From NCBI RefSeq assembly GCF_000315625.1, contig NW_005434658.1, positions 711,139-775,138 on the forward strand: DNA of 64,000 nucleotides, given 5' to 3'. The position numbers and the translations under genes are program-made. The DNA is from Guillardia theta CCMP2712. Lineage: Eukaryota; Protista; Cryptophyta. The first letter of the stretch is position 1. The number at the start of each line of letters is the position of its first letter. The notes beneath the pieces were generated by a model that made no database searches, was not told the origin of the DNA, and saw nothing but the letters and a program-made list of their open reading frames with translations. Shown here in pieces: positions 16,125 through 20,849 of this stretch.

Positions 16125-18277
16125 ACTGGAGCTTGAGCTGCTGGTGCTGTAGTTGCTGCTGGTGCAGCTACTTTTCCTGTCTTCTCTTTGCTTTTTCCAT
16201 TCTGCCATTGTGCTGCACGTGTCCTGACGTCTCCCGTTGCTCGCAGAAGGCCAAGGACGGAGGTAGCAGACCTCTGCTGCTCACCATGGGGAGAAACATC
16301 AACTCGCTCTCTCTCGGCCTCATGTCAGCCGGCGGGTTTGCTCGGGTTGTTTCTATCACGCACTGCCCACTGGCTCACAGAGACCTGGAAATCAACCTGA
16401 AGGAGATCCCCGGCTTGATCTCGGGAGACGACAACCTCCTCGTCCGGCAGAAGAACAAGATCGGAGAAGCGATCATGCAGGTGCGAGGCCCCCGGATCGA
16501 TGGAGGGGAAGGAGGAAAGAGATGTGGGAGCTGGGGGGACGGAAGGGAGTGGGAGAATTGGGGGAAGAGAGCGAGCGTGAAGGAGGGAGGGAGGAAGAGG
16601 GTGGAACAGGGAGGGAGGGGACAGAGGGGAGGGGTTGGGAGAAAGAGAGTTGGAGAGGAAGAGGAAGTGTTCCGTTGCCTGTTTGCCTGTTTGCTCTTTC
16701 TGTGATTTTGCTCGAACAGCTTCCGGACGATTGTCCGATCGTTGTGGCAGTGACTGCGGGACGAGGAGGCTTGCATGCAAACACGATCGTTGCACTGAAG
16801 AAGAAGAAGAATGTCTGCACTGTCGTGTATGACGCCTGTAACAACCCAACACTGGTGAGCAAGCCGATGATGTGATTGGAGTCTGTGTTGCTGTCTTACT
16901 GTCTTGTTCTCACCTCCATCTCTTTACCAGACAAGAGATCTCTGCGATCTTGTGGACGACTTTGACTACTGTATTGCCAACTTTCGATCTTTCGACTTCT
17001 TCCCGCAAACAGAATTTATGGCGTCTGTAGCCAAGTTGGACCGAGCAAGGTGGGAAAAGGGGAAGGGAAGAGAAGGGAAGGGGAGGGAAGGGGAGGGAAG
17101 GGGAGGGGAGGGGAGGGGAGGGGAGGGATGGGAAGTAACTCGCAAGAGCAGGAAGACTCTCATCTTGCCCATCGGGCCCTCAGGCATCGGCAAATCGAGT
17201 CTGGCAAGAAAATGCTTGGGCAGCTTCCCCGTGCAGACTATGAGACACATCGAGCGAGATGCTCTGTTTGCGCAAGAGAGAGCACGGTGATTTTCTCTTC
17301 CTCCTTATATCATGTCTCTCCTCTCCTCCTCATTCCCTCTCCATCCTGTTTCCTGTCTCTCCTCCCCCCTCTCCTCCTCCATCCCTCCTGTTTCTCTCCT
17401 CTCCTCTCCTCCTCTCTCCCTCTCCCTCCTGTTTCCTCTCTCTCAACTGTCCTTTTTCTCTCCTCTCCCCCCTTAGATCACATCTGATGCGTTTTGATAC
17501 CAGTGAGACGGAAAGTGCACTAGCAAAGAAAGATCATCTGCTGAGCATCTCTGCTATCTCCTCGCCCATTCCTCCATCCCTTCTCTTCACACTCACTCAG
17601 CATCTCCATCTCGATTTTCTCCCTCCCTCCATCTAGTCTCACTCTCTCATTCAGTCCGGATGCCACGCTGGCAAAGGCGAAGCAAGCGACGCACGAGGCG
17701 ATGCTGGCGCAGCTGAGAGAGGAGACGCGCCTCCTTCTCCTCGACAGCACCAACGGAGACCCGCAGGCTCGCAGGCTCTACGTCCTCACGTCGGGGGCCG
17801 AGCGAGTCGTCGCCGTCAACATGCAGATGCGGCATGAAGGAAGAGCTTCCTTTCTGCTTGCCGAGGATGACGAGGACGTGCAGGAGGAGAGGTCCCTTCC
17901 AGCCTGATGGAGGCGACGATGAGAAGGACAAAGGTGGAGTTGGAGGTAAGACAGGGAAGAGGGGGAGGGAGGCTGACCGGTGGGCAGGAGGGCAGGCATC
18001 CGTCGTTCCCGCTGGAGGAGGAGAAACAGAGGGCCAAGCACGCAAAGATACTCGAGGGGCTGCAGTACGCGGAGGCGTCGGAGATTGAGGAGGTGAGAGT
18101 GAGAGGTGACGGGGGGAGGAGATCACAAGCGCGTTCAGGTTCCTATCGCAATCGTCGACGTCGAGCAAGAGGCGAGTGAGGAGGAGAAGAATGAGCTCGT
18201 GCTAATGTGGGGTGGGGCAGGAGGACGCAGAGGAAGTGACCTTCGCCGTCTTCCTGAAAGTTTTCTCCTTCCTGTGA
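15141..18277 (+). CDS. TrmA/RlmD-family RNA (uracil-5)-methyltransferase-like domain fused to a P-loop (AAA_33/polynucleotide kinase-like) domain
   Basis: GYRNK, FALSPDTFCEVN, VVYDACNNPTL|TRDL, FDFFPQT, then LILPIGPSGIGKSSLAR, IERD, LLLDSTN..QAR and GRHPSF. Exons are joined by GT/GC-AG introns. Start and last exons are approximate. Confidence 0.8.
17477..17624 (+). repeat. 148-bp dispersed intronic element, copy 1
   Basis: 144/148 identical to 31754-31901. Lies inside intron 17287-17654. Confidence 0.95.
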
Positions 18278-18329
18278 GGACCAAAGGACCAGTCTCATCA
18301 TGTCGTTTCTATCATCACCCTTCTCAAGA

Positions 18330-20825
18330 TTATACGTAAACCCACGACCCGTCCACCCTCCTCTCCTTGAAGAGACAGACACCCCACCTGTACATCTCGT
18401 CAACAAGTGTTCTCGTCCTTCCCACCCTCCCTCCCTCCCCCGTCTCCCTCCCACCTCCTCCTTCCCTCCCTTATATGGTTCTGCTTCCTCTGCTTCGACC
18501 CATTTTCTGCTTCTTCCATCCCCAACCACGCCACCACCACCACCGATGTTACTTCCTCCTCTCTTTCCTCCCCCCTCCTCCTCTCCAACCTTGACTTGTC
18601 GTTAGCTGTGTAGCACCATGGCCTTGCCGAATAATCCGTCGTGCAGGCAGTCTTGCATGTGTCTCCAGGTAACGACGTCCCTCCTACTTCAACATCATCC
18701 TCCCATCATCGGGCGCGCCTGTCACGCACCTGCCACCTCCACCTTGCATGACGCAAACGTCGTCTGCTCCCTGTCGGTGAAGCACCACAGGTTGCCGGGC
18801 ACGTGCGTCCCGTTGGGCGTCGGGCCGTCGACACAACTGCGTCAAGTTTGAGCGAGGAGTGAGGAGAGTCCAACGGACGGCAACCTTCCGTAAATCTTGC
18901 CCTCGTACAGGAAGGGAAAGCTGCAGGATGTCGCGTTGTCGTCCTCCTCGCCTTCCTCCACCTGTTCACAGCCCCGTCAGACATGGCAGGAGTCAGCCTC
19001 CTCCCCCTCCTCACCTCAATGTACTGTTCGCAGTTTCCCCATCTCGTCTGCTCCTTGTCGGCATAGCACCATGGAGCATCTCGGCCCTGTCACCCATCAG
19101 CCCCCCCGCCATGCCCCTACGACTTCCCAGCTCCTCTCACCTGAGTTGTGCACCTCGTGAAGATCTGATCGTTGAAGTAGAAGGGAAAGTGGCAGTATCG
19201 ATCCGTGGGCAGAGTCGACCCGCCAAACACCCTGATCTCCCCCAGAGGCAAAGCCATCACTCCCTACCCCAAAATCGTCACTTGCATCGGCTCAACTTCT
19301 CGTCCCTCCTCTACCTCTTTCCCAGGCAAGCCCTTGTGACCGTCTCGTCCAGGTCTGCCCCTGTACCCCACCTGCCTCATGGGTCAGCAAGGGACCTTTG
19401 CCTCCCTCCCCTTCAACTCACCTCTCCTCGCGCTCCGATGTTGCCCAGCGGTCCGGGGGAACCAGGATACCCGCGTGGACCAGGAGGCCCTGAGATCCCG
19501 GGAGCACCATAGGCTGGAGCCGGTTTACCGGGAGGCCCTTGGAAGCCTGCACTGGCGTCATCCTCCTTTACCAACCTGCCCGTCCTGACACACCGTCTGG
19601 CCCAGGTCGTCCAGGTTTTCCCTCTCGTCCTGGCATTCCTGGAGTTCCGTCCTTGCCGTTGTATCCGGGAGTTCCATCCCTATAAGCAGCTCTCAGCCTC
19701 CCCTCCTCACTCCTCCTCCTCTGTCAACCTGCCCATGGCGCCGATGGGACCTGGCATCCCATCCTGGCCATCTCGCCCTGCCGCCCCCTGCCTCCCTGGC
19801 AGCCCTGGAGGTCCTGGAGGGCCAGTCTCTCCCTGGCACAACAGGACGTGAGCGCTCACTGAGATCATCGGCCTCATCCCAGCTCACCTTGGCACCCGGA
19901 GGCCCCTTAGGCCCTGGCTCGTAGCTCGGGATCCCATCTACTCCATCCAACCCGGGGCTTCCTGGAACTCCCGGCGGACCCTCTGCTTTCACCGCGTCAG
20001 CCCTCCGTGCAAAGAGCAAGTGCGGGGACAGGACCTGGGCCAGCAACCTTGGAAGGGATCCCTGGCTTGCCGTCTATCCCTGGAGCTCCTGGCTCTCCTA
20101 CTCCTAGATCAGCAGGCGACCAGGCAAGCATCGAAACAGACTTACCTGGCGGACCCTCCGGGCCAACTGGTCCTGACTCGCCGGGGTACCCAGGAGGGCC
20201 GATGAAGCCAGGAGAACCTCTCGGCTTCTTGGCCTCAGAAACCTGCAAGGACAAGGAACCGTCAGGTCTACTCCACGTCCTGACTCAGCTTTACCTCGTC
20301 TTCCAGGTGATATTGCCTCTTTGCTGCTCGGTTGATCAGAACCTGGAGCTCGCCGAGTAGGCGATAGATCCTTTGGGAGTAGCTCAGAACTTCCTCTCCA
20401 CGAGGGTTTGGTCCAGGGCATTCGGGACCACCAGGCCCTCCACAGTGCGGCCCTGGCGCTGGAGGAGGAGGTGGTGGTGGCAAAGGTGCCCCCACAGGTC
20501 CGTTATGGATTGAGTCGATGATGGACTGCAGACGATTCATCTTGTTTTGCATGAAGTTGTACTCTCTAACATCCTGATCCCCCTCTGAGTACGCAAACTG
20601 TCTGCCCATCCCGTGGTCGATCATGTCGTTCGGCACATCGTTTACATGCGGCACCGTGTAATCGTTGAGCAACTCCTCCACCGCATGTGCGCTTCCATCT
20701 TCTCTTCTCCCAGAGGACCGGAGGAACAAAATGGCACATGACACGGAGGCAAGCAAGACAAGCATCAAGGCTGCTGTTCTCTTCCTCCCTCCCATCCTCC
20801 TTCCCCTGCCCCCGCCTGCCTCCAT
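18330..20825 (-). CDS. Signal-anchored collagen-like (Gly-X-Y) protein with three C-terminal fibronectin type II-like modules
   Basis: N-terminal RKR plus hydrophobic anchor, short coiled coils, poly-Pro, interrupted GPP/GEP/GKP repeats over several exons, then CHFPFYFNDQIFTRCTTQGRDAPWCYADKEQTRWGNC, CSFPFLYEGKIYGSCVDG..LWCFT..C and CKTACTTDYSARPWCYTANDKSRWGVC. Stop TAA at 18330-18332. Confidence 0.88.
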
Positions 20826-20849
20826 TCCACGCCCCTTCGCAGACCGTTA

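What the first reader, a model, noticed from the sequence alone, without database searches (positions are those of the whole stretch)
18330..20825. Algal protein combining a collagen Gly-X-Y stalk with three fibronectin type II modules
Seen: splicing the minus-strand exons gives a signal anchor, short coiled coils, poly-Pro, an interrupted Gly-X-Y region, then CHFPFYFNDQIFTRCTTQ|GRDAPWCYADKEQTRWGNC (a very good FN2 match), CSFPFLYEGKIYGS|CVDG..LWCFTDREQTTFASC, and a reduced third module CKTACTTDYSARPWCYTANDKSR|WGVC. Each module is split by an intron, so the ORF track never shows one. Established: FN2 domains are the gelatin/collagen-binding modules of animal fibronectin, MMP2/9 and the mannose-receptor family. 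The type II anchor, coiled coil, collagen, ligand-binding head layout recalls class A scavenger receptors. Inference: heads of one trimer could bind the stalks of another and build a self-assembling surface lattice (periplast or scale material), or the protein is a trimeric capture receptor in a unicellular alga.
Basis: partly seen in the sequence, partly recalled or inferred. Interest (0 to 1): 0.88.

Follow-up and report, generated by a model that had tools for sequence, protein, structure and literature searches.

The report
Cryptophyte collagen-stalk protein with FN2 heads
A unicellular alga (Guillardia theta) expresses a real, conserved protein built like an animal scavenger receptor, with a membrane anchor, coiled coil and long collagen stalk, but tipped with fibronectin type II modules, a domain usually regarded as animal-specific.

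Summary
Window 18330-20825 (minus strand) is a 14-exon gene. Assembled transcript contigs from three runs show 12 of its 13 introns directly, and contig piece boundaries imply the 13th. The collagen exons and the Cys-rich exons lie on one mRNA.

The 562-aa product is the public Guillardia theta protein XP_005836983.1 (GUITHDRAFT_104401; UniProt name 'Fibronectin type-II domain-containing protein'), plus 20 extra N-terminal residues. So it is already in databases, but I found no paper on it.

- **Pfam:** Collagen 93.8 bits; fn2 43.5 bits. Modules 1 and 2 pass the fn2 cut-off. Module 3 is a truncated FN2/kringle-like core below threshold.
- **Fold:** a model of an orthologue's head matches only FN2 structures best (Z 7.4-7.7, rmsd 1.5-2.1 Å). 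Kringles score about Z 3.
- **Trimer:** a three-copy model of coiled coil plus collagen passes its controls (0.38 against 0.18).
- **Conservation:** two full-length orthologues (58% identity) keep every Cys and every Gly-X-Y interruption. One of them is intronless.

G. theta also has at least 9 collagen-SRCR loci and a collagen-H-lectin locus, so this gene is one member of a set of collagen-stalk proteins with different heads. Earlier first-stage notes of this scan describe similar collagen-stalk proteins on other pieces of this genome.

The trimeric stalked binding protein is well supported. The ligand, gelatin binding and the self-assembling lattice are untested.

The parts
20295..20825 (-). 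Exon 1 (aa 1-177): start codon, Arg-rich tail, membrane segment, conserved N domain, poly-Pro/Cys linker, coiled coil
   Evidence: ORF and splice donor. Transcript contigs reach 20835. No Pfam family. Conserved in 11 homologue clusters.
20721..20777 (-). Hydrophobic segment aa 17-35: type II signal anchor, or the long h-region of a signal peptide
   Evidence: It is the only Kyte-Doolittle 19-residue window above 1.0 (2.52). Six K/R lie in the 17 residues before it. AF2 predicts a helix at 14-37.
20502..20573 (-). Conserved helix aa 85-108 (motif ...RLQSIIDSIHNGP)
   Evidence: AF2 helix. 74% identity to orthologues over aa 65-110. Invariant columns in alignment A2.
20400..20495 (-). Poly-Pro run and conserved Cys pair (C128, C136), a candidate interchain disulfide knot
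   Evidence: Sequence. The Cys pair is kept in 10 of 12 homologues. The disulfide role is inferred.
20295..20399 (-). Coiled-coil helix aa 143-177, directly before the collagen region
   Evidence: AF2 helix 149-176 with pLDDT 89-92. The trimer model of the orthologue shows contacts spaced 3-4 residues apart at 163-199, then continuous staggered contacts.
19315..20242 (-). Exons 2-8 (20242-20146, 20097-20035, 19982-19888, 19832-19729, 19679-19594, 19546-19422, 19371-19315): collagen region aa 186-388, 63 Gly-X-Y triplets, three 4-residue interruptions
   Evidence: Splice joints in transcript contigs. Pfam Collagen 93.8 bits. Pro fills 30 of 63 Y positions and 16 of 63 X positions. The interruptions sit at the same positions in the orthologues.
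19015..19263 (-). Exons 9-10 (19263-19141, 19086-19015): linker and FN2 module 1 (aa 410-446), split by an intron after CTTQ
   Evidence: fn2 33.9-34.2 bits over profile positions 1-42 of 42. Exon 9 alone scores 21-25 bits. phmmer against PDB: MMP-9 at 3.4e-11.
18730..18961 (-). Exons 11-12 (18961-18885, 18836-18730): acidic linker and FN2 module 2 (aa 464-507), with the intron one residue before Cys2; sequons N460 and N485
   Evidence: fn2 28.7-29.0 bits. It is the least conserved part of the head, at 34-43% identity.
18330..18683 (-). Exons 13-14 (18683-18590, 18387-18330) with the 202-nt intron 13: reduced module 3 (aa 522-548, four Cys), conserved 14-residue tail, TAA stop
   Evidence: Kringle 18.9-24.4 bits, below cut-off. 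The orthologue's module scores fn2 21.2 bits over profile positions 12-42. 70-86% identity to orthologues.
18242..18329 (-). 3' UTR, overlapping the 3' end of the convergent plus-strand neighbour gene
   Evidence: In the stranded raw reads of X21 the orientation switches in the 18242-18355 bin. Unstranded contigs fuse the two convergent transcripts.

Best explanation
GUITHDRAFT_104401 encodes an extracellular homotrimer carried on a collagen stalk. It works like a class A scavenger receptor or a membrane collagen.

1. A short Arg-rich tail and one hydrophobic segment most likely hold the N-terminus in the plasma membrane (type II orientation).
2. A conserved helical N domain, a poly-Pro/Cys linker and a three-stranded coiled coil bring three chains into register.
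3. The coiled coil nucleates a triple helix of about 203 residues (about 58 nm) with three short breaks.
4. The C-terminal end displays 3 x (two canonical FN2 modules plus one truncated FN2/kringle-like module).
5. This gives a nine-module head that binds a repetitive extracellular ligand by avidity.

Shown: gene structure, expression, domain identities, FN2 fold, conservation.
Supported by a model only: trimerisation.
Inferred: topology, multivalent binding and the ligand. My first guess for the ligand is collagen-like or proline-rich polypeptides of the cell's own coat, at about one chance in four.
For: - **One spliced mRNA joins all the parts.** Joints appear in contigs of three runs, and stranded raw reads cover the 3' end.
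- **Pfam passes.** Collagen 93.8 bits and fn2 43.5 bits on the whole protein; modules 1 and 2 each clear the cut-off.
- **The head folds as FN2.** In the model of the orthologue's head, the FN2 modules have pLDDT 70-78. Foldseek's top hits are all FN2 proteins (MMP-2/-9 at 3e-9). VIA gives Z 7.4-7.7, rmsd 1.5-2.1 Å over 53-56 residues against fibronectin, Endo180, mannose receptor and MMP-2 FN2 modules. Kringles score about Z 3. phmmer against PDB finds MMP-9 at 9e-19.
- **The trimer model passes its controls.** The score is 0.38 and the best of 3 controls 0.18. That mark was reached by 21 of 30 proteins solved as pairs of one chain and by 0 of 23 solved as single chains. The runs agree in at least 77% of contacts, and partner pLDDT is at least 67. 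Contacts follow a heptad pattern at 163-199, then run continuously and staggered over 201-290.
- **Topology signals.** There is a single hydrophobic helix, preceded by six K/R residues.
- **Animal-like collagen composition.** Pro fills 30 of 63 Y positions. The genome has at least 14 loci for P4H-type dioxygenases.
- **End-to-end orthologues.** Both keep all Cys and all Gly-X-Y breaks. The N domain, coiled coil and module 3 plus tail are 70-86% identical.
- **Same layout with other heads in this genome.** An anchor-coiled coil-collagen-SRCR x2 gene was read directly. Collagen hits are co-located with SRCR or H-lectin hits at 10 or more loci.
Against: - **No wet-lab data.** There is nothing on localisation, oligomer state, hydroxyproline or ligand.
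- **The hydrophobic segment might be cleaved.** The orthologues have AQA-G and ALA-AS-like motifs near its end, which would make the protein a secreted collectin-like trimer.
- **The FN2 modules differ from gelatin-binding ones.** They have a 2-residue and a 3-residue deletion. The second removes the Asn-Tyr/Phe-Asp (N-Y/F-D) segment. The Phe before Cys4 is Asn, Ser or Leu.
- **Modest model confidence.** The head model has a mean pLDDT of only 61.5 and was built on three sequences. Module 3 is poorly modelled.
- **The trimer pass may come from memory.** Solved collagen helices are well known, and the test was calibrated on two copies, not three.
Confidence: 0.6

Rival explanations
1. It is a secreted, soluble collectin-like trimer. 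The N-terminal hydrophobic segment is a cleaved signal peptide, and the protein acts as an agglutinin or coat component outside the cell rather than as a membrane receptor.
For: The orthologues have small-residue motifs (AQA-G, ALA-AS) near the end of the hydrophobic segment. The conserved Cys pair in the N-terminal linker recalls the N-terminal Cys region that multimerises collectins (the comparison is from general knowledge).
Against: The hydrophobic stretch is 19-22 residues and is modelled as a 24-residue helix, which is long for a signal peptide h-region. The strongly basic stretch before it fits the positive-inside rule for an anchor. No cleavage-site predictor was available.
Confidence: 0.2
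2. It is a structural matrix protein. FN2 heads of one trimer bind the collagen stalks of neighbours and build a self-assembling surface layer linked to the periplast.
For: FN2 modules of fibronectin, MMP-2/-9 and Endo180 bind collagen or gelatin (established knowledge; these are the closest structural matches). The genome encodes many Pro-rich cellular collagens that could be partners.
Against: The binding-pocket segment of vertebrate FN2 is altered. The gene is single-copy, and nothing indicates the abundance expected of a coat protein. No interaction test was possible.
Confidence: 0.12
3. It takes part in a virus interface. The collagen-binding head engages the collagen-like fibres of polinton-like or giant viruses of cryptophytes, either as an exploited entry receptor or as a capture or decoy molecule.
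For: The genome carries virus-like fibre ORFs with collagen repeats plus PA14 and Laminin_G_3 domains. Polinton-like viruses of cryptophytes are reported to carry collagen-repeat fibre proteins (PMC12220804). FN2-2 is the fastest-evolving part of the head.
Against: The case is purely circumstantial. Viral fibre repeats (GATGPQ type) are Pro-poor and unlike gelatin. There are no expression or infection data.
Confidence: 0.06
4. It is an artefact: a chimeric gene model, animal contamination, or a recent transfer from an animal.
For: FN2 has been classed as deuterostome- or vertebrate-specific (PMC2394772; 10.1101/2021.03.15.435234).
Against: - The gene sits in a 1-Mb scaffold among ordinary nuclear genes (La-type RNA-binding protein, biotin synthase), with typical short G. 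theta introns.
- The introns cut inside the modules at three different positions, which I recall is unlike the one-module-one-exon pattern of vertebrate FN2.
- Transcripts come from seven studies.
- Orthologues occur in other cryptophyte-like sequences.
- At least 9 other FN2 loci exist in the genome.
- An FN2 cluster is commonest in diatoms.
Confidence: 0.02

Closest known systems
Class A scavenger receptors (SR-AI/MSR1, MARCO, SCARA5) and CL-P1/COLEC12
   Same: Same order of parts: short cytoplasmic tail, type II membrane segment, spacer, alpha-helical coiled coil, collagenous stalk, C-terminal Cys-rich recognition head. A trimer that presents several heads.
   Different: The head is FN2 x2 plus a truncated module, not SRCR or a C-type lectin domain. 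The N-terminal region has no detectable sequence similarity to these receptors (no Pfam hit). The host is an alga. G. theta also has true collagen-SRCR proteins elsewhere.
Membrane collagens with interrupted triple helices (collagens XIII, XXIII, XXV; also XVII)
   Same: Type II orientation. The coiled coil sits N-terminal to the collagen and is expected to nucleate folding from N to C. The collagen region is broken by short non-collagenous interruptions.
   Different: These collagens have no globular Cys-rich head. No furin-type shedding site is recognisable here. There is no sequence homology outside the Gly-X-Y repeats.
Collagen-binding domain of gelatinases MMP-2 and MMP-9 (three tandem FN2 modules)
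   Same: These are the best sequence matches (MMP-9 at 9e-19) and the best structure matches. Modules are in tandem with a similar Gly-Gly-containing linker. In the Atlas search the MMP-9 cluster aligns over model residues 1-166 (135 aligned residues, TM 0.50 by query), a span that includes all three modules.
   Different: In gelatinases the modules are inserted in a protease; here they cap a collagen stalk. The loops between Cys2-Cys3 and Cys3-Cys4 are shorter. The third module lacks the first hairpin.
FN2 domain of the mannose receptor family (Endo180/uPARAP, MRC1, PLA2R, DEC-205)
   Same: An FN2 module used in the ectodomain of a membrane receptor. Structural matches at Z 7.5-7.7, rmsd 1.5-2.1 Å, 32-38% identity for Endo180 and the mannose receptor and 24-28% for PLA2R and DEC-205.
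   Different: Those are type I receptors with a single FN2 beside C-type lectin domains, and they have no collagen stalk.
Collectins, ficolins and C1q (soluble defence collagens)
   Same: A trimeric collagen stalk with a clustered recognition head. A Cys-containing N-terminal segment.
   Different: In collectins the coiled-coil neck follows the collagen; here it precedes it. The heads are CTLD, fibrinogen-like or gC1q, never FN2.

Membership tests
Fibronectin type II domain (Pfam PF00040) | Score at or above the Pfam gathering threshold (22.2 bits) | tested here: met
   Module 1 scores 33.9-34.2 bits over profile positions 1-42 of 42, and module 2 scores 28.7-29.0 bits. The whole protein scores 43.5 bits. 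Module 3 does not meet it: no fn2 hit in the window's protein, and 21.2 bits in orthologue P0002.
Fibronectin type II domain (Pfam PF00040) | Four conserved Cys with the FPF...C...WC...C pattern | tested here: met
   Modules 1 and 2 have C-x13-C, then C-x9-C (module 1) or C-x16-C (module 2), then C-x11-C, with the FPF and WC motifs. All Cys are invariant in three orthologues. Disulfide pairing was not determined.
Fibronectin type II domain (Pfam PF00040) | FN2 fold (two short antiparallel sheets), closer to FN2 than to kringle | tested here: met
   In the AF2 head model of orthologue P0002 (FN2 modules at pLDDT 70-78), module 1 gives Z 7.4-7.7 and module 2 gives Z 6.3 against solved FN2 modules. 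Kringles give Z of about 3. The model is of medium confidence and is of the orthologue, not the window's own protein.
Fibronectin type II domain (Pfam PF00040) | Aromatic pocket used for gelatin or collagen binding | tested here: inconclusive
   The FPF/Y cluster, the Trp before Cys3 and the aromatic residue three before Cys4 are kept. The Asn-Tyr/Phe-Asp (N-Y/F-D) segment is deleted, and the Phe before Cys4 is replaced. Which residues form the pocket is recalled from memory, not taken from a tool.
Fibronectin type II domain (Pfam PF00040) | Binds gelatin or collagen | not testable with these tools
   Needs recombinant protein.
Collagen triple helix repeat (PF01391) | Long Gly-X-Y repeat above the Pfam threshold, rich in Pro | tested here: met
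   93.8 bits against 27.2, in 4 stretches. 63 triplets. Pro fills 16 of 63 X positions and 30 of 63 Y positions.
Collagen triple helix repeat (PF01391) | Forms a homotrimeric triple helix | tested here: inconclusive
   The three-copy model of P0002 residues 150-290 scores 0.38 against 0.18 for the best of 3 controls ('supports, does not show'). That mark was reached by 21 of 30 proteins solved as pairs of one chain and by 0 of 23 solved as single chains. The runs agree in at least 77% of contacts, and partner pLDDT is at least 67. Contacts are staggered by one residue. The pass may come from memory of solved collagens.
Collagen triple helix repeat (PF01391) | 4-hydroxyproline in the Y position | not testable with these tools
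   Only the capacity was checked: at least 14 loci match PF13640 above its cut-off.
Class A scavenger receptors | Type II membrane topology | tested here: inconclusive
   One hydrophobic helix at aa 17-35 follows six K/R. Cleavage as a signal peptide is not excluded.
Class A scavenger receptors | Coiled coil followed by a collagenous domain | tested here: met
   Helix 149-176, then Gly-X-Y from aa 186. Heptad-type contacts in the trimer model.
Class A scavenger receptors | SRCR (or C-type lectin) C-terminal head, and sequence homology to SCARA proteins | tested here: not met
   The head is FN2. Pfam finds no SRCR or Lectin_C. The N-terminal region has no family hit. The protein therefore works like this family but is not a member.
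Collectins | Domain order: collagen, then alpha-helical neck, then C-type lectin domain | tested here: not met
   Here the coiled coil precedes the collagen, and the head is FN2.

The most novel reading that the evidence does not exclude
Cryptophytes have a recognition repertoire of trimeric proteins on collagen stalks with interchangeable heads: FN2 here, and SRCR, H-lectin, VWD and PA14 elsewhere in the genome. It would be either homologous to or convergent with animal defence collagens and scavenger receptors. The FN2-headed member would specifically recognise collagen-like polypeptides, such as the collagen fibres of the polinton-like or giant viruses that infect these algae, or collagenous coat material.
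Probability: 0.15. Interest if true: 0.85.

Novelty: new variant of a known kind. Interest (0 to 1): 0.58.

Why it matters
Collagen-stalked trimeric receptors and FN2 modules are usually treated as animal inventions tied to extracellular matrix and innate immunity. FN2 has been classed as deuterostome- or vertebrate-specific (PMC2394772; 10.1101/2021.03.15.435234).

Here a photosynthetic protist far from animals has an expressed, conserved protein that joins an animal-style Pro-rich collagen to FN2 modules that pass Pfam's cut-off and model as FN2. The same genome also holds MARCO-like collagen-SRCR genes.

This has three consequences:
- It pushes the FN2/kringle split outside Metazoa, or else implies an ancient transfer.
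- It gives a tractable non-animal system for asking what a collagen stalk plus a multivalent head is for in a single cell.
- It offers candidate molecules for the poorly known surface layer of cryptophytes, or for their contacts with viruses.

The protein is already deposited and auto-annotated. What is new is the reading of it, not the sequence.

Tried and rejected
**1. Naive splicing.** Two of my first splice sites were wrong (a 29-nt intron, and an acceptor 6 nt too early). I corrected them from transcript joints.

**2. Pfam on exon 1.** No family was found.

**3. ESM Atlas feature search with the head.** No usable hit.

**4. Word-based homologue search with the head.** It found only two orthologues and one salmon-louse FN2 protein. 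It missed the window's own public protein, which a later search with the N-terminal region did find.

**5. Is the intronless orthologue on TARA metagenome contigs viral?** Rejected, for these reasons:
- GC content is 54-74%.
- The neighbours are eukaryotic (bromodomain, PARP/MORN).
- The neighbouring 1006-aa ORF has a 49%-identical homologue in G. theta.
- A neighbouring gene looks split into exons.

**6. Contamination or recent animal transfer.** Rejected; see the last rival explanation.

**7. Is this gene part of an endogenous virus, like many collagen-repeat ORFs in this genome?** Rejected. Those ORFs are intronless and Pro-poor (GATGPQ repeats), with PA14 and LamG domains, and lie on small scaffolds. 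This gene has 13 introns and cellular neighbours.

**8. Paper searches.** I searched FN2 with Guillardia, collagen with Guillardia theta, scavenger receptor with collagen and cryptophyte, and SRCR with Guillardia. None describes this protein.

**9. A search for a citable list of FN2 pocket residues.** Nothing usable was found. The pocket comparison rests on memory and is marked as such.

**Note on method.** The result was later reproduced by reference with P0022. Read laying was given 3401 letters.
Full report
**Gene structure and expression**

On the minus strand, an ATG at 20825 opens a 531-nt first exon. Thirteen GT-AG introns follow. Twelve are 46-55 nt long and one is 202 nt. The frame closes at a TAA at 18330.

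Eleven runs guessed to be RNA hold about half of the sampled words of the stretch, as expected if only exons are present. Four other runs hold 87-100% of them; their type is not on record, and I read them as DNA. The holders come from seven studies.

I laid contigs of three of those runs on the stretch. They carry 12 of the 13 junctions as CT..AC joints. The 13th is implied by the piece boundaries 20145-20240 and 20293-20835. A single contig of about 2.2 kb joins exon 1, all the collagen exons and all the Cys-rich exons.

The joints corrected two of my own splice choices: the exon 3 acceptor is at 20097 and the exon 6 donor at 19594. Both corrections make the Gly-X-Y pattern more regular.

Stranded raw reads (X21, 3'-biased, low depth) lie in opposite orientations on this gene and on the convergent plus-strand neighbour. 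The two 3' ends overlap around 18242-18355. This overlap explains why unstranded contigs fuse the two transcripts.

**Identity of the genome and the protein**

The genome has 87.1 Mb in 669 contigs. The spliced 562-aa protein equals P0022 from residue 21 onward. P0022 is XP_005836983.1 / EKX50003.1 / UniRef100_L1JPL0, 'hypothetical protein GUITHDRAFT_104401 [Guillardia theta CCMP2712]'. UniProt names it 'Fibronectin type-II domain-containing protein', with Pfam Collagen and fn2 precomputed.

The sequence and its two domain labels are therefore already public. The public model starts at an internal Met. I prefer the ATG at 20825 for two reasons. The contigs reach 20835, and the orthologues also have a basic stretch before the hydrophobic segment.

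Four paper searches found nothing on this protein or on FN2 in cryptophytes.

**Anatomy, from N- to C-terminus**

| Residues | Feature | Evidence |
|---|---|---|
| 1-16 | Arg-rich tail, six K/R | |
| 17-35 | The only strongly hydrophobic segment (Kyte-Doolittle 2.52); modelled as helix 14-37 | |
| 65-110 | Conserved domain with a helix at 85-108; 74% identical to orthologues; many invariant columns across 12 homologues | |
| 111-142 | Poly-Pro run and a Cys pair kept in 10 of 12 homologues | |
| 149-176 | Helix with pLDDT 89-92 | |
| 186-388 | 63 Gly-X-Y triplets in runs of 13, 7, 27 and 16, separated by three 4-residue breaks | |
| 410-446 | FN2 module 1 | |
| 464-507 | FN2 module 2 | |
| 522-548 | Four-Cys module 3 | |
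| 549-562 | Conserved 14-residue tail | |

Pro fills 30 of 63 Y positions and 16 of 63 X positions. From memory, this resembles animal collagens and is unlike the Pro-poor bacterial or viral collagens. The helical length would be about 58 nm.

**Are the modules FN2?**

- **Whole protein (by reference):** Collagen 93.8 bits (E = 5.2e-27), fn2 43.5 bits (E = 3.2e-11), Kringle 24.4 bits, which is below its cut-off.
- **Module 1:** 33.9-34.2 bits over the whole 42-position profile.
- **Module 2:** 28.7-29.0 bits. The cut-off is 22.2.
- **Single exons:** exon 9 alone reaches 21-25 bits.
- **Module 3:** it matches only the C-terminal half of the kringle profile (18.9-19.7 bits as an isolated module) in the window's protein. 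In orthologue P0002 it matches fn2 positions 12-42 at 21.2 bits. I read it as a truncated FN2/kringle-type core without the first hairpin, not a third canonical FN2.
- **Sequence matches to solved structures:** module 1 hits human MMP-9 (3.4e-11), fibronectin (1.5e-7) and factor XII FnII (1.1e-6). The orthologue's whole head hits MMP-9 at 9e-19.
- **Structure:** the AF2 model of the orthologue's head has a mean pLDDT of 61.5 and 70-78 in modules 1 and 2. Foldseek's top hits are all FN2 proteins (MMP-2/-9 at 3e-9). VIA gives Z 7.4-7.7 at rmsd 1.5-2.1 Å over 53-56 residues for module 1, and Z 6.3 for module 2. Kringles score about Z 3. In the Atlas search the MMP-9 cluster aligns over model residues 1-166 (135 aligned residues), with TM 0.50 by query.

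Compared with vertebrate modules, both FN2s have two changes. There is a 2-residue deletion before the Trp-Cys. There is also a 3-residue deletion that removes the Asn-Tyr/Phe-Asp (N-Y/F-D) segment. In addition, the Phe before the last Cys is replaced. As I recall, those positions contribute to the gelatin-binding pocket, so binding specificity cannot be read off from homology.

**Trimerisation**

I folded three copies of P0002 residues 150-290. The score was 0.38, against 0.18 for the best of 3 controls. That mark was reached by 21 of 30 proteins solved as pairs of one chain, and by 0 of 23 solved as single chains. The runs agree in at least 77% of contacts, and partner pLDDT is at least 67.

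Contacts are spaced 3-4 residues apart over 163-199. They then run continuously over 201-290 with a one-residue stagger. This is what a three-stranded coiled coil leading into a triple helix should look like.

The tool warns that such a pass may come from memory of solved collagens, and that it was calibrated on two copies. I count it as support, not proof.

The genome has at least 14 loci matching the P4H-type dioxygenase family. This shows capacity for prolyl hydroxylation only.

**Conservation and distribution**

A full HMMER scan of 1.84 billion representatives with exon 1 found 11 related clusters and nothing else convincing.

Two are full-length orthologues. P0002 (578 aa) comes from 2.1-kb JGI contigs. 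P0013 (582 aa) comes from TARA and ENA marine metagenome contigs of up to 35 kb. Both align end to end with the window's protein at 58% identity and almost no gaps. Every Cys and all three Gly-X-Y interruptions are kept. A Hanusia phi fragment falls in the same 90% cluster.

Conservation is highest in the N domain, the Pro/Cys linker, the coiled coil, and module 3 with its flanks (70-86%). It is lowest in FN2-2 (34-43%).

The gene is single-copy in G. theta.

In the uncultured relative the gene is one uninterrupted ORF in DNA. It sits in a gene-dense eukaryotic region containing a bromodomain protein, a PARP/MORN protein and a 1426-aa Collagen + H_lectin + PA14 protein. Another ORF on that contig has a 49%-identical homologue in G. 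theta. So it is a cryptophyte-like eukaryote, not a virus.

The three introns that split the modules in G. theta lie at three different positions within the module. As I recall, vertebrate FN2 modules are each encoded by one exon. Both points argue against a recent transfer from animals.

**Genomic context of the domains**

G. theta has at least 9 loci that reach the fn2 cut-off, including the window's own. Some lie in giant ORFs, and one is a tandem pair in GUITHDRAFT_140296, which has a Hanusia orthologue. It has one true Kringle, fused to a methyltransferase. An ESM Atlas cluster of FN2 proteins is commonest in diatoms. FN2 is therefore not confined to animals, contrary to older classifications.

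The genome gives at least 137 six-frame Collagen hits. They fall into two classes:
- **Virus-like:** intronless, Pro-poor giant ORFs with PA14 and Laminin_G_3 domains on small scaffolds. These resemble the fibre proteins described for polinton-like viruses of cryptophytes.
- **Cellular:** Pro-rich collagens.

Among the cellular class, collagen hits lie 0.3-0.6 kb upstream of SRCR hits on the same strand at 9 or more loci, and about 2 kb upstream of H-lectin hits at one locus. I read one of these loci directly (L033). It encodes a hydrophobic anchor, a coiled coil, collagen and two SRCR domains, which is a MARCO-like protein. Another has collagen followed by VWD, and another has an anchor followed by collagen.

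The FN2-headed gene is thus one member of a set of collagen-stalk proteins with different heads. Earlier first-stage notes of this scan describe similar genes on other pieces of this genome.

**Neighbourhood**

- Downstream, convergent with overlapping 3' ends, lies a plus-strand gene that earlier notes read as a methyltransferase fusion.
- Upstream lie GC-rich spacer, a La-type RNA-binding protein and biotin synthase.
- Nothing nearby suggests a functional cluster or a mobile element.

**Interpretation**

- **Best supported:** an extracellular homotrimer on a collagen stalk of about 58 nm. It is probably anchored in type II orientation and presents nine Cys-rich modules for avidity binding. 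It works like class A scavenger receptors and membrane collagens.
- **Not a member of those families:** the head is not SRCR or CTLD, and the N-terminal part has no detectable homology.
- **Open questions:** the ligand, the topology (anchor or cleaved signal) and any lattice formation remain inference.

**Verdict**

I class it as a new variant of a known kind. The sequence is already deposited and auto-annotated, but I found no published description. Interest is moderate to high for the evolution of matrix and recognition proteins.

Noticed in passing
G000 C33:30300-34800 (L033, minus strand). Also C165:23499-24610, C72:120192-120977, C94:216294-216929, C188 (three loci), C113:86-935 and C32:208905-209608.: At 9 or more loci a collagen repeat lies 0.3-0.6 kb upstream of SRCR domains on the same strand. 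L033 reads as hydrophobic anchor, coiled coil, collagen and two SRCR domains, a MARCO/SR-AI-like protein in a cryptophyte.
   Followed up: partly
G000 C175:3335-6297 (+), L029: Collagen repeats are followed about 2 kb downstream by two or three H-type lectin domains, a collagen-stalk lectin. In the TARA relative, a 1426-aa Collagen + H_lectin + PA14 ORF lies 2 kb from the FN2-collagen orthologue (L031:3368-7648).
   Followed up: partly
L013, L031 and L032 (TARA/ENA marine metagenome contigs, up to 35 kb): The orthologue is a single uninterrupted 582-aa ORF in genomic DNA of an uncultured, GC-rich (54-74%), gene-dense cryptophyte-like eukaryote. G. theta has 13 introns in the same gene. One 84-aa member of its protein cluster is labelled as a Promethearchaeia MAG in NCBI, which is probably a mis-binned contig.
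   Followed up: partly
G000 C291, C318, C210, C94:205000-215000, C184 and C164 (L019-L021, L024-L026): Intronless giant ORFs (about 950-2000 aa) carry Pro-poor GATGPQ-type collagen repeats plus PA14/GLEYA and Laminin_G_3 domains, and share a conserved MSC(R/D)N... start. They look like fibre genes of endogenous viruses, as described for polinton-like viruses of cryptophytes.
   Followed up: partly
G000 C11:296500-303000 (L008:2222-3727, minus strand): A 502-aa open frame joins a full Kringle domain (80.4 bits) to a class I SAM methyltransferase domain, behind a hydrophobic N-terminal segment. This is an odd fusion.
   Followed up: no
G000 C44:545000-552500 (L002:3176-4282, minus strand): GUITHDRAFT_140296 has a tandem FN2 pair followed by a Cys-rich EGF-like tail. 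It has an 82%-identical Hanusia phi orthologue and 40%-identical metagenomic relatives.
   Followed up: partly
window 18388-18589: Intron 13 is 202 nt, four times the length of the other twelve. It is purine-rich (GGAGG runs). The reads tool skipped 18412-18452 as a repeat.
   Followed up: no
window 17900-18355 (+): The convergent plus-strand gene has GT..AG introns at 17944-17985 and 18091-18136, and a third near 18170-18218. Its 3' end overlaps the 3' UTR of the collagen-FN2 gene by roughly 100 nt.
   Followed up: no
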